Source: Orbicella franksi (Eukaryota). From it: a DNA stretch of 64,000 nucleotides. Of this stretch, positions 57,616 to 59,273 are shown piece after piece. The notes beneath the pieces were generated by a model. That model made no database searches. It was not told where the DNA came from and worked only from the letters and a program-made list of their open reading frames with translations. The stretch covers positions 28,086,001-28,150,000 of the forward strand of contig OZ116706.1 in the NCBI GenBank assembly GCA_964199315.1, given 5' to 3'. Position 1 is the first letter of the stretch, and every line of letters starts with the position of its first letter. The translations under genes and the position numbers were made by a program.

Positions 57616-59273
57616 CTATATGGCGGAATTTTTGGGATTGTAAGTCTGCAGTTTCGCTGCTGTCGTTATCCCCCACCAATTGGTGACTGTTTCTGTGTCC
57701 TGAAGATTATTGATGTCTGATCGCCTGTGCAGCTTGCCATCTTTAACTTGAAACAACGGAGAGTTGTTTTTTTCTTCCTGGTCAACAAACGGTATCAGAT
57801 CGGTCACCTCAGCAGGGTCAAGAGTCTGGTTGGGATTTTTGTAGGCCTCGTACACCTGGTCACTGGATTTCGCAACAGCCTCTTGTGCAATCTTAAAATT
57901 ACTTCCGCTCTCTTTTTTCCGCAGCATGCCGTCGCCATATGAAATCCACTTGTCTCCCCTCTTGTTTTGGACACGCAGACCATGCTTGTTGTCCTCATCG
58001 TGCATGTACTTACAGAGCAAGTGGCCAACTTTCCCCACCAGAGTCGCCTTTCCCAACTCAACTCGTGGCGTTCTACAAACAAAGAAAGTTTTACAGTGGT
58101 TTTTGAAGATCAAAATTTGATTCAAGCAAACGACTTGACTGGTTCTTGGAGAGGATACAGCTTAAAACAACGTACAAAGTAAATATTGCTGCCAAAGAAA
58201 TGTTTAAAGTGAAAATAACCAACTAAGAACTAATGACACCACTTAATAATTAGTCATAACAAGTATGAAAATCGAAGCGGAAAGTATAAACTATATAAGA
58301 TAAAAAGTAAGTGGTAAGAAGTAACACTCCATCATTCAAGTTTAATTTTATAATAATAATAGTAATAATAATAATGATAGTAATAATAACAATAATTATA
58401 ATAACAACTATTAATAATTAATTAATTAATTTGTACTAGTTAGTTAATTAATTAATTTATTTATTTATCAGTTCATGAAGGAACAGAAGCGAATTCCCGC
58501 TTCTGTCAAGGAACAAACTATATTGCTGAAACCGTTTATTACAAACGGCGCTGTTTACCTTATGTGACCACTGGCAAAACTATCAGTGAGGAAATGGCAG
58601 GAAAACGCCTCCAACGAAAATGCTTCATGAAGAAGCATCTTGGGCTCGTCTTTATCATCCCCGCTATAGCTACCAGCCTCCCTCGCTTTGTCAATCGCTA
58701 GCTGATGACCAGTTAGGTACGCGTCTTTTGCATGAGGAAGGAAATGATCGTGGTTGTTTTCAGCCAATTTCATCATCCTGCCTAGTTTGATTGGTACACC
58801 AGCAATCCATACACCGCCAGTAATTTTGTCCCATATGCTTGCATCAACTGCCGCACCAGCCTCGCGTTCTTTCTCTAACGTGGCCAACAGCTTGTCTAAC
58901 TCATTCTGTGACTCCTTCTTCGGTGTGCGTGCCAGGGTGTTGTAGGCGTCTCTGAAACGCTGGTGCCTACCAGAATCCTCTTGGTCAACATTGTTGAAAG
59001 CCGGATCGATAATTGGTTGATTCGGTAAACCATAGAAATCTCCGCTATGATTTCTTCAAACTTAATTTCTACACCATTTCGAAGCGTAAGGAGTTTTAGT
59101 TCCTCCATCTTTATATTTATCTTGCCAAGCTCCAGATGCTCATATGCTTCAAATCCTCGAAATATTTCACGTGCATCAAATCCATCATGATCAAACAATC
59201 TGGTTGTCTGATCGTCCAGACGTGCAACCAAGATCAGCCGTACTGGATGCCGCAAACGATTAACGGAACACAT
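57616..59273 (-). pseudogene. Bacterial-type Zn-dependent phospholipase C-like gene (Pseudomonas fluorescens/Legionella PlcA-PlcB family), two exons, with a -1 frameshift (pseudogene or sequence error)
   Basis: Exons 58559-59273 and 57616-58072, GT-AG intron in phase 2. Motifs: FEAYEH, LRNGVEIKFEEIIA/GDFYG, NHDHF, EAFSCHFLTDSFASGHIRTPR, MHDEDNKHGLRVQNKRGDKWISYGDG. The frame changes at 59044-59045 (ATA GC GGA GAT); about 390 aa if corrected. Family assignment is from recalled motifs, not a database search. Confidence 0.7.

What the first reader, a model, noticed from the sequence alone, without database searches (positions are those of the whole stretch)
57616..59273. Intron-containing animal gene of a bacterial/fungal-type Zn-metallophospholipase C family
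The motif series (F..EH, GDFYG, DHF, HFLTDSFASGHIRTPR, HDEDN..GL.V.N.RG..W..YGD) matches my recollection of the P. fluorescens/Legionella PlcA-PlcB-PlcC zinc phospholipase C family, known mainly from bacteria and some fungi. A canonical 486-bp AT-rich intron and host-type repeats on both sides show it is integrated in the animal genome (seen). Inference: an old horizontal acquisition, or a patchily retained ancient gene, possibly used in defence, venom or symbiont-membrane remodelling.
Basis: partly seen in the sequence, partly recalled or inferred. Interest (0 to 1): 0.7.

Follow-up and report, generated by a model that had tools for sequence, protein, structure and literature searches.

The report
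Frameshifted coral zinc phospholipase C gene
A coral-type animal genome holds a spliced copy of an enzyme family best known from Pseudomonas and Legionella (zinc phospholipase C), but coral copies were already noted in print and this copy has its reading frame broken once, so it is an ordinary and possibly disabled member of a known family.

Summary
A transcript-like contig from a relative crosses that junction without a gap. 114 genomic ORF products of relatives stop at the same boundary.

The family assignment is also right. The best named relatives are uncharacterised proteins of stony corals and octocorals. The next are 'phospholipase' proteins of the Pseudomonas fluorescens group (34-37% identity over nearly the full length). 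The literature ties those proteins to Legionella PlcA/PlcB/PlcC.

Three points temper the finding:
- The coding sequence is broken once by a frameshift in the first coding exon. A 93%-identical genomic copy elsewhere is intact.
- The family is multi-copy across Anthozoa, probably across Cnidaria, and shares an old intron. Its presence in corals was mentioned in a 2019 paper.
- A link to the classical zinc PLC/P1 nuclease fold is not shown. There is no Pfam, PDB or Foldseek match at significance, although the invariant His/Asp spacing fits that fold.

The origin (old transfer or patchy retention) stays open. Verdict: a new, possibly recently inactivated member of a known kind. Interest is low to moderate.

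The parts
57616..59273 (-). Coding region (ATG to stop) of the zinc-phospholipase-C-like gene. It has two coding exons and is broken once by a frameshift in the first coding exon.
   Evidence: All 14 family-invariant residues and 30 of 34 near-invariant ones are kept.
58073..58558 (-). Intron of 486 nt, GT..AG, phase 2, 27% G+C. It contains a (TAA)n-like microsatellite.
   Evidence: Transcript-like contig L001 skips it. 114 relatives' ORFs end at the same boundary. Composition is and the repeat.
59274..59299 (-). 5' untranslated part of the first coding exon, preceded by an AG acceptor.
   Evidence: L001 positions 92-127 align to 59301-59266. Sequence read.
59300..61491 (-). Putative intron in the 5' UTR. 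It holds two foldback inverted repeats (59360-59891 and 60599-61014). The dinucleotide at the expected donor is not the canonical one in this copy.
61492..61529 (-). Putative non-coding first exon (5' UTR).
   Evidence: L001 positions 52-93 align here at 86% identity, E 3e-7. Read.
61606..61650 (-). Promoter-like CCAAT (61646-61650) and TATA-like (61606-61611) boxes upstream of the putative first exon.
   Evidence: Read directly. This is inference only and was not tested.

Best explanation
This is one paralogue of a cnidarian multigene family homologous to the bacterial zinc metallophospholipase C family of Pseudomonas fluorescens PC-PLC/PlcC and Legionella PlcA/PlcB/PlcC. The gene has a non-coding first exon, a 2.2-kb 5'-UTR intron and two coding exons split by an old, conserved phase-2 intron. 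Intact relatives are transcribed. By homology (inferred, not shown), they would be metal-dependent phospholipases C that cut phosphatidylcholine-type lipids into diacylglycerol and a phospho-head group. Catalysis would use the invariant His/Asp/Glu set: EH, GD, DH, GH, H-x3-D-x5-H, HDED, GD. Lacking a signal peptide, this branch would act inside the cell. The window copy itself carries one frame-breaking lesion in its first coding exon and a non-canonical dinucleotide at the putative 5'-UTR donor. It is therefore most likely a recently inactivated copy. Everything else, including all catalytic candidates, is still in place.
For: - Splice model and motifs.
- Closest relatives: P0200/L082 is genomic, 93% nt identity over 1 kb including intron and upstream DNA, 94% aa in the main exon piece, and has an intact frame. 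P0176/L001 is transcript-like, 81-82% aa.
- Named relatives: Pocillopora, Montipora, Oculina, Porites, Dendronephthya and Paramuricea.
- Bacterial relatives: 356 matching stretches in the GTDB species genomes. The top 80 are nearly all P. fluorescens-group at 34-37% identity over residues 15-366 of 371. NCBI names them 'phospholipase', and one is 385 aa, the length of the characterised PlcC (PMC2613904).
- Literature: P. fluorescens PlcC is 43% identical to L. pneumophila PlcA. PlcB's best hit is P. fluorescens, and the family reaches corals (PMC6617341). PlcC is a Zn2+ metallophospholipase C acting on PC, PG and PI (PMC7025538).
- Constraint: dN/dS is 0.29, 0.16 and 0.22 for the main pieces. 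All 14 invariant residues are kept.
- Cnidarian sequences form one clade with 76% NJ bootstrap.
- One frame change only. The lesion is longer than a single-base slip.
Against: - Lineage-specific amino-acid changes are no more frequent in the window copy (5) than in the intact L082 copy (3). Any inactivation is therefore very recent, or the frameshift is an assembly error or one allele.
- No reads were available to check it.
- The exact truncated product is not on record elsewhere. The lesion junction was not found in JGI metagenomes. Both results are uninformative.
- No activity, metal content or expression is shown for any cnidarian member.
- No Legionella protein came back as a named hit in my own searches, so that link rests on papers.
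- The fold search found no significant structural relative.
Confidence: 0.7

Rival explanations
1. The gene is functional in the animal. The single frame change would be an assembly or consensus error, or one null allele of a heterozygous locus.
For: There is no excess of window-specific amino-acid changes. All invariant residues are kept. Purifying selection acts on the main pieces. The second coding exon is fully open. The closest genomic relative is intact, and its 90% cluster has 23 member sequences.
Against: The difference from the intact copy is several bases long, not the single-base homopolymer slip typical of consensus errors. The expected 5'-UTR donor dinucleotide is also non-canonical.
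Confidence: 0.3
2. The family is an ancient eukaryotic gene kept patchily (fungi, cnidarians, some marine eukaryotes). Bacteria that live with eukaryotes (Legionella, Coxiellaceae, Rhabdochlamydia, Pseudomonas) would have taken it from hosts, rather than cnidarians taking it from bacteria.
For: PMC6617341 calls PlcA/PlcB 'eukaryotic-like' and places them with yeast and coral proteins. The NJ sister of the cnidarian clade is a set of unnamed Tara Oceans protist-fraction ORFs (81% bootstrap). These have AT-rich flanks, and one sits on a contig with sparse, fragmented ORFs that looks eukaryotic. The intron is shared across deep cnidarian paralogues.
Against: The bacterial breadth is large: 356 matching stretches in the species genomes across several phyla. 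The nearest relatives that have genomic context are bacterial. Deeper tree nodes have no support (3/200 and 1/200). No named non-cnidarian animal or fungal sequence was recovered by my own searches.
Confidence: 0.35
3. The stretch is bacterial contamination or a very recent transfer, not a resident animal gene.
For: None beyond the bacterial homologues.
Against: It has two spliceosomal introns. A relative's transcript is spliced at the same site. The flanks are eukaryotic, with NACHT/WD40 genes and foldback repeats. The G+C content of the surrounding window and of the intron is low, as in the rest of this eukaryotic window. Identity to bacterial proteins is only 34-37%.
Confidence: 0.02
4. Cnidarian members have changed substrate and act as another metal-dependent phosphoesterase, for example a nuclease or sphingomyelinase, rather than as a phospholipase C.
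For: No cnidarian member has been assayed. The classical zinc PLC fold is shared with P1/S1 nucleases (textbook knowledge). A plant S1/P1-type nuclease appears among the weak fold hits.
Against: Every residue that is invariant across bacterial and cnidarian members is the same, so there is no sign of a remodelled active site. The characterised members are all phospholipases C.
Confidence: 0.1

Closest known systems
Pseudomonas fluorescens PC-PLC (Preuss enzyme; PlcC of strain MFN1032, 385 aa)
   Same: It is homologous over almost the whole length: 34-37% identity, residues 15-366 of the 371-aa coral relative. It shares the same invariant His/Asp/Glu set. It has no classical signal peptide.
   Different: The bacterial gene has no introns, is single-copy and encodes a secreted haemolysis-associated enzyme. 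The coral gene has introns, belongs to a multigene family, and is frameshifted here.
Legionella pneumophila PlcA, PlcB (type II secreted) and PlcC/CegC1 (Dot/Icm effector), the 'novel zinc metallophospholipase C family' of Aurass et al. 2013
   Same: The papers place them in the same family: PlcA is 43% identical to P. fluorescens PlcC, and PlcB's best hit is P. fluorescens. A Coxiellaceae (Legionellales) genome bin encodes a 425-aa relative that is 36% identical to the coral protein.
   Different: No Legionella protein came back as a named hit in my searches, so the link is indirect. The Legionella proteins are secreted or injected virulence-associated enzymes. The coral protein is an endogenous and probably cytosolic one.
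Annotated anthozoan homologues (Pocillopora damicornis XP_027056029.1, Dendronephthya gigantea XP_028403488.1, Montipora foliosa, Oculina patagonica LOC144650543/4, Porites lobata, Paramuricea clavata)
   Same: They have the same architecture, motifs and intron position, and are 45-73% identical.
   Different: Those records are intact. The window copy has one frame change. None of them is the orthologue, since the closest is the unnamed P0200 at 94%.
Classical zinc-dependent PLC / P1-S1 nuclease superfamily (Bacillus cereus PC-PLC, Clostridium perfringens alpha-toxin N-domain; Pfam PF00882)
   Same: Both are mostly alpha-helical. An invariant H-x3-D-x5-H block is followed by a helix that carries another invariant His and acidic residues. 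From textbook knowledge, this is the spacing of the zinc ligands in that superfamily. PF00882 is the only Pfam family hit by more than one member (2 of 50, best E 0.026). PC-PLC, alpha-toxin and a plant nuclease make up 10 of the top 50 weak fold hits. UniProt labels two coral members 'Phospholipase C/D domain-containing protein'.
   Different: There is no significant sequence, profile or fold match. The family domain is about 350 residues against about 245. Rossignol et al. also found no significant similarity to B. cereus PC-PLC.

Membership tests
P. fluorescens PC-PLC / Legionella PlcA-B-C zinc metallophospholipase C family | Significant full-length sequence similarity to characterised members | tested here: met
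   An alignment led by the 82%-identical relative P0176 finds P. fluorescens-group proteins at 34-37% identity over residues 15-366 of 371, E 1e-58 to 1e-66. These are named 'phospholipase', and one is 385 aa like the characterised enzyme. The window pieces themselves hit the same set.
P. fluorescens PC-PLC / Legionella PlcA-B-C zinc metallophospholipase C family | A named Legionella PlcA/PlcB/PlcC returned as a hit | tested here: inconclusive
   None appeared among the listed hits. The lists were capped and dominated by cnidarians or Pseudomonas. The link rests on PMC2613904 and PMC6617341 and on a Coxiellaceae relative.
P. fluorescens PC-PLC / Legionella PlcA-B-C zinc metallophospholipase C family | The conserved residues of the family are present | tested here: met
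   14 columns are invariant across 50 diverse members and all are kept in the window. 30 of 34 near-invariant columns are also kept. The list of essential residues in Aurass et al. 2013 could not be read because the paper is not held.
P. fluorescens PC-PLC / Legionella PlcA-B-C zinc metallophospholipase C family | Zinc-dependent phospholipase C activity | not testable with these tools
   Known only for bacterial members.
P. fluorescens PC-PLC / Legionella PlcA-B-C zinc metallophospholipase C family | Uninterrupted coding sequence (a working member) | tested here: not met
   There is one frame change in the first coding exon. Intact relatives exist.
Classical Zn-dependent PLC / P1 nuclease superfamily (PF00882, PF02265) | Match to the Pfam model above its gathering score | tested here: not met
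   There is no hit for the window pieces or close relatives. 2 of 50 family members hit PF00882 weakly, best E 0.026.
Classical Zn-dependent PLC / P1 nuclease superfamily (PF00882, PF02265) | Same fold as B. cereus PC-PLC / P1 nuclease | tested here: inconclusive
   The AlphaFold model of P0176 has pLDDT 92 and pTM 0.91. Foldseek against the PDB gives no match at E<=0.001. PC-PLC, alpha-toxin and the TBN1 nuclease recur among weak hits with TM at most 0.29. The profile search of PDB sequences is empty.
Classical Zn-dependent PLC / P1 nuclease superfamily (PF00882, PF02265) | Nine-ligand trinuclear zinc site | tested here: inconclusive
   At least ten invariant or near-invariant His/Asp/Glu are present, including an H-x3-D-x5-H block.
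Gene acquired by horizontal transfer from bacteria | Stable integration in the host genome | tested here: met
   Shown by introns, the spliced transcript of a relative and host neighbours.
Gene acquired by horizontal transfer from bacteria | Recipient clade nested inside donor diversity with support | tested here: inconclusive
   The cnidarian clade has 76% bootstrap. Its sister is a set of unnamed marine ORFs that may be eukaryotic. Deeper nodes are unsupported. Only neighbour joining was available.
Gene acquired by horizontal transfer from bacteria | Patchy distribution among relatives of the recipient | tested here: inconclusive
   All named animal hits are cnidarians.

The most novel reading that the evidence does not exclude
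Cnidarians took up, or alone among animals kept, a bacterial-type zinc phospholipase C before Anthozoa and Medusozoa split. They then expanded it into a family with cytosolic and signal-peptide-bearing forms that turn over quickly: tandem copies, a frameshifted copy here, and a transposon next to a short second-exon ORF in another genome. These enzymes would serve in membrane attack on, or remodelling around, intracellular microbes. That role would fit this copy's position beside a cluster of NACHT/WD40 immune-receptor-like genes.
Probability: 0.2. Interest if true: 0.55.

Novelty: new member of a known kind. Interest (0 to 1): 0.3.

Why it matters
If the family does work in corals, it would be an animal use of an enzyme otherwise known as a bacterial haemolysis- and virulence-associated lipase. 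It could bear on how corals handle intracellular bacteria or symbiont membranes. It is also a clean case for asking which way genes moved between host-associated bacteria (Legionella, Coxiellaceae, chlamydiae) and eukaryotes. However, the coral presence is already recorded in databases and mentioned in a 2019 paper. This particular copy adds only a possibly dead paralogue, and no function is shown in any animal.

Tried and rejected
- Pfam and NCBIfam on the three window pieces and on eight relatives gave no family.
- PADLOC gave nothing.
- PDB sequence searches with the pieces and with a 50-member profile gave only low-complexity hits to designed helical proteins, or nothing.
- Foldseek of a high-confidence model against the PDB and against viral models gave nothing significant.
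- Domain fusions were checked in long bacterial members. Only DUF4116 repeats in a Rhabdochlamydia protein turned up.
- I tested the idea that the gene is an upstream exon or partner of the neighbouring NACHT/WD40 gene and rejected it. The gene has its own stop codon and the relative's transcript has its own UTRs. Upstream ORFs of the NACHT genes show no similarity. A paralogue in another coral sits next to a Vav-like gene instead.
- A second copy in the window was sought and not found.
- An exact look-up of the truncated product and an exact search for the lesion junction in metagenomes both found nothing, which is uninformative.
- Aurass et al. 2013 could not be read.
- The 'GoldUCD' EukProt tag could not be traced. 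Assigning it to the jellyfish Aurelia is my inference.

Full report
**What is there**

A GT..AG intron of 486 nt (58073-58558, phase 2) separates HFLTDSFASGHI from TPRVELGK. Its G+C content is 27%, against 48% in the flanking exons.

The splice is confirmed by relatives:
- L001 is a 1489-nt contig from a public sequencing run with one uninterrupted 371-aa ORF (P0176). It aligns to window 59114-58558 and then directly to 58074-57612.
- Annotated proteins of Pocillopora, Montipora and Dendronephthya read through the junction.
- Among the 511 homologues fetched, 114 ORF products called on genomic DNA stop within two residues of that boundary.

The same transcript also matches 61529-61492 and 59301-59266. 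The gene therefore has a non-coding first exon and a 2.2-kb intron in its 5' UTR. CCAAT- and TATA-like boxes lie at a sensible distance upstream. That promoter reading is inference.

**The break**

The coding sequence is not one open frame. The N-terminal part and the rest of the first coding exon lie in different frames. Alignment with relatives shows a single frame change there.

L082 is a 999-nt genomic contig that is 93% identical across upstream DNA, exon and the start of the intron. It has an intact 237-aa exon product, P0200. Relative to it the window exon has four indels: two are in frame and two lie together out of frame, giving one net frame change. The dinucleotide at the expected 5'-UTR donor is also non-canonical.

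Nothing else is damaged:
- The second coding exon is open.
- All 14 residues invariant in 50 diverse family members are kept, as are 30 of 34 near-invariant ones.
- dN/dS for the main pieces is 0.16-0.29.
- The window lineage has no excess of private amino-acid changes: 5, against 3 for L082.

So the copy is either very recently inactivated, a null allele, or mis-assembled. I favour a real lesion because it is longer than a one-base slip.

**What family**

No Pfam, NCBIfam or PADLOC model covers the protein. An exhaustive phmmer search with one 164-aa piece found 540 proteins at E<=1e-3.

The closest named relatives are uncharacterised proteins of stony corals (Pocillopora, Montipora, Oculina, Porites) and octocorals (Dendronephthya, Paramuricea). 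There are several paralogues per genome, and several of them share a scaffold or chromosome. Two EukProt records tagged 'GoldUCD' are 62-66% identical to an Oculina paralogue, and one of them ends at the same exon boundary. I infer, without proof, that these records are from the jellyfish Aurelia.

Outside cnidarians, a scan of one genome per bacterial species found 356 matching stretches. The best 80 are almost all from the Pseudomonas fluorescens group, at 34-37% identity over residues 15-366 of 371. The rest are Coxiellaceae, Myxococcaceae and Herpetosiphonaceae bins. NCBI names these Pseudomonas proteins 'phospholipase'.

The literature closes the chain:
- The 385-aa P. fluorescens PlcC is a lecithin-degrading, haemolysis-associated PLC. 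It is 43% identical to L. pneumophila PlcA and unrelated to P. aeruginosa PLCs or B. cereus PC-PLC (PMC2613904).
- PlcB's nearest relative is in P. fluorescens (PMC6617341).
- PlcC/CegC1 is a Zn2+ metallophospholipase C acting on PC, PG and PI (PMC7025538).

**What is not shown**

The relation to the classical zinc PLC/P1 nuclease fold is only suggestive.
- For it: the invariant H-x3-D-x5-H block followed by a helix with His and acidic residues, compared with ligand spacing known from textbooks. PF00882 is the only Pfam family touched by more than one member (2 of 50, E 0.026). UniProt gives two coral members the label 'Phospholipase C/D domain-containing protein'. Ten of the top 50 weak Foldseek hits are PC-PLC, alpha-toxin or a plant S1/P1 nuclease.
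- Against it: nothing is significant. The AlphaFold model of P0176 is very confident (pLDDT 92, pTM 0.91) yet has no PDB match at E<=0.001 and no TM-score above 0.29. A family profile finds no PDB sequence.

I could not read model coordinates, so the metal site was not measured.

**Origin**

In a neighbour-joining tree of 160 members, all cnidarian sequences form one clade (151/200 bootstraps). Their sister (162/200) is a set of five unnamed ORFs. The one traced comes from the Tara Oceans protist size fraction. These ORFs have no intron and AT-rich flanks, and one lies on a contig with sparse, fragmented ORFs that looks eukaryotic. Deeper nodes have no support.

The nearest relatives with clear context are bacterial. 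The shared intron and deep paralogues show long vertical inheritance inside Cnidaria. Whether the stem acquired the gene from bacteria, or bacteria took it from eukaryotes as White and Cianciotto suggest, cannot be decided here.

**Likely working**

Most cnidarian paralogues, including this one, have no signal-peptide-like N-terminus. Two Dendronephthya paralogues do (a crude test). I therefore read this branch as an intracellular metal-dependent phospholipase C. The venom idea is unlikely for this copy. Defence or symbiosis roles remain speculation.

The gene lies about 7 kb upstream of the third of three tandem NACHT/NWD1-HTH/WD40 genes. That neighbourhood is not conserved at a paralogue in another coral.

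**Novelty and score**

Coral members are in public annotation and were mentioned in 2019. This is a new and possibly dead member of a known family. Interest is 0.3.

Noticed in passing
window 18850-25092, 33302-38438, 45231-50408 (minus strand): Three tandem genes combine a NACHT/STAND NTPase, an NWD1-like winged helix and long WD40 propellers. This is an NLR-like immune-receptor cluster typical of cnidarian genomes. The second and third have uninterrupted ORFs of 1098 and 1117 aa. The first copy is split into several shorter ORFs.
   Followed up: partly
window 59360-59891 and 60599-61014: Two foldback (MITE-like) inverted repeats lie inside the putative 5'-UTR intron. The first is a 532-nt near-perfect hairpin with arms 81-91% complementary. 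Neither is repeated elsewhere in the window.
   Followed up: partly
window 55675-55767, 56014-56118, 58318-58434: (TAA)n / (CAA)n-type microsatellites lie downstream of the gene and inside its coding intron.
   Followed up: no
L084 10001-16726: In another coral assembly, a paralogue's first coding exon is followed by a short second-exon ORF (117 aa). Directly after that comes a 1357-aa retrotransposon pol ORF (RT, RNase H, integrase). That copy may be interrupted by a transposon. I did not examine it further.
   Followed up: no
L086 6001-8295: In a bacterial genome bin, the family member is followed 13 bases later, on the same strand, by a patatin-like phospholipase gene. This suggests a lipase pair.
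   Followed up: no
proteins P0196 and P0197 (Dendronephthya gigantea): Two octocoral paralogues begin with a hydrophobic, signal-peptide-like stretch, unlike the other cnidarian members. The family may therefore include secreted forms.
   Followed up: partly
protein P0002 (294 aa, residues 1-110): One coral-like relative carries four tandem copies of the short N-terminal G-E-H-x-x-I-G motif ahead of the domain. This motif contains the first invariant histidine of the family.
   Followed up: no
window 51343-51942 (minus strand): A 199-aa ORF lies between the third NACHT/WD40 gene and the phospholipase-like gene. It has only a weak sub-threshold match to a transmembrane domain family (PF22251, E 0.0011).
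   Followed up: no
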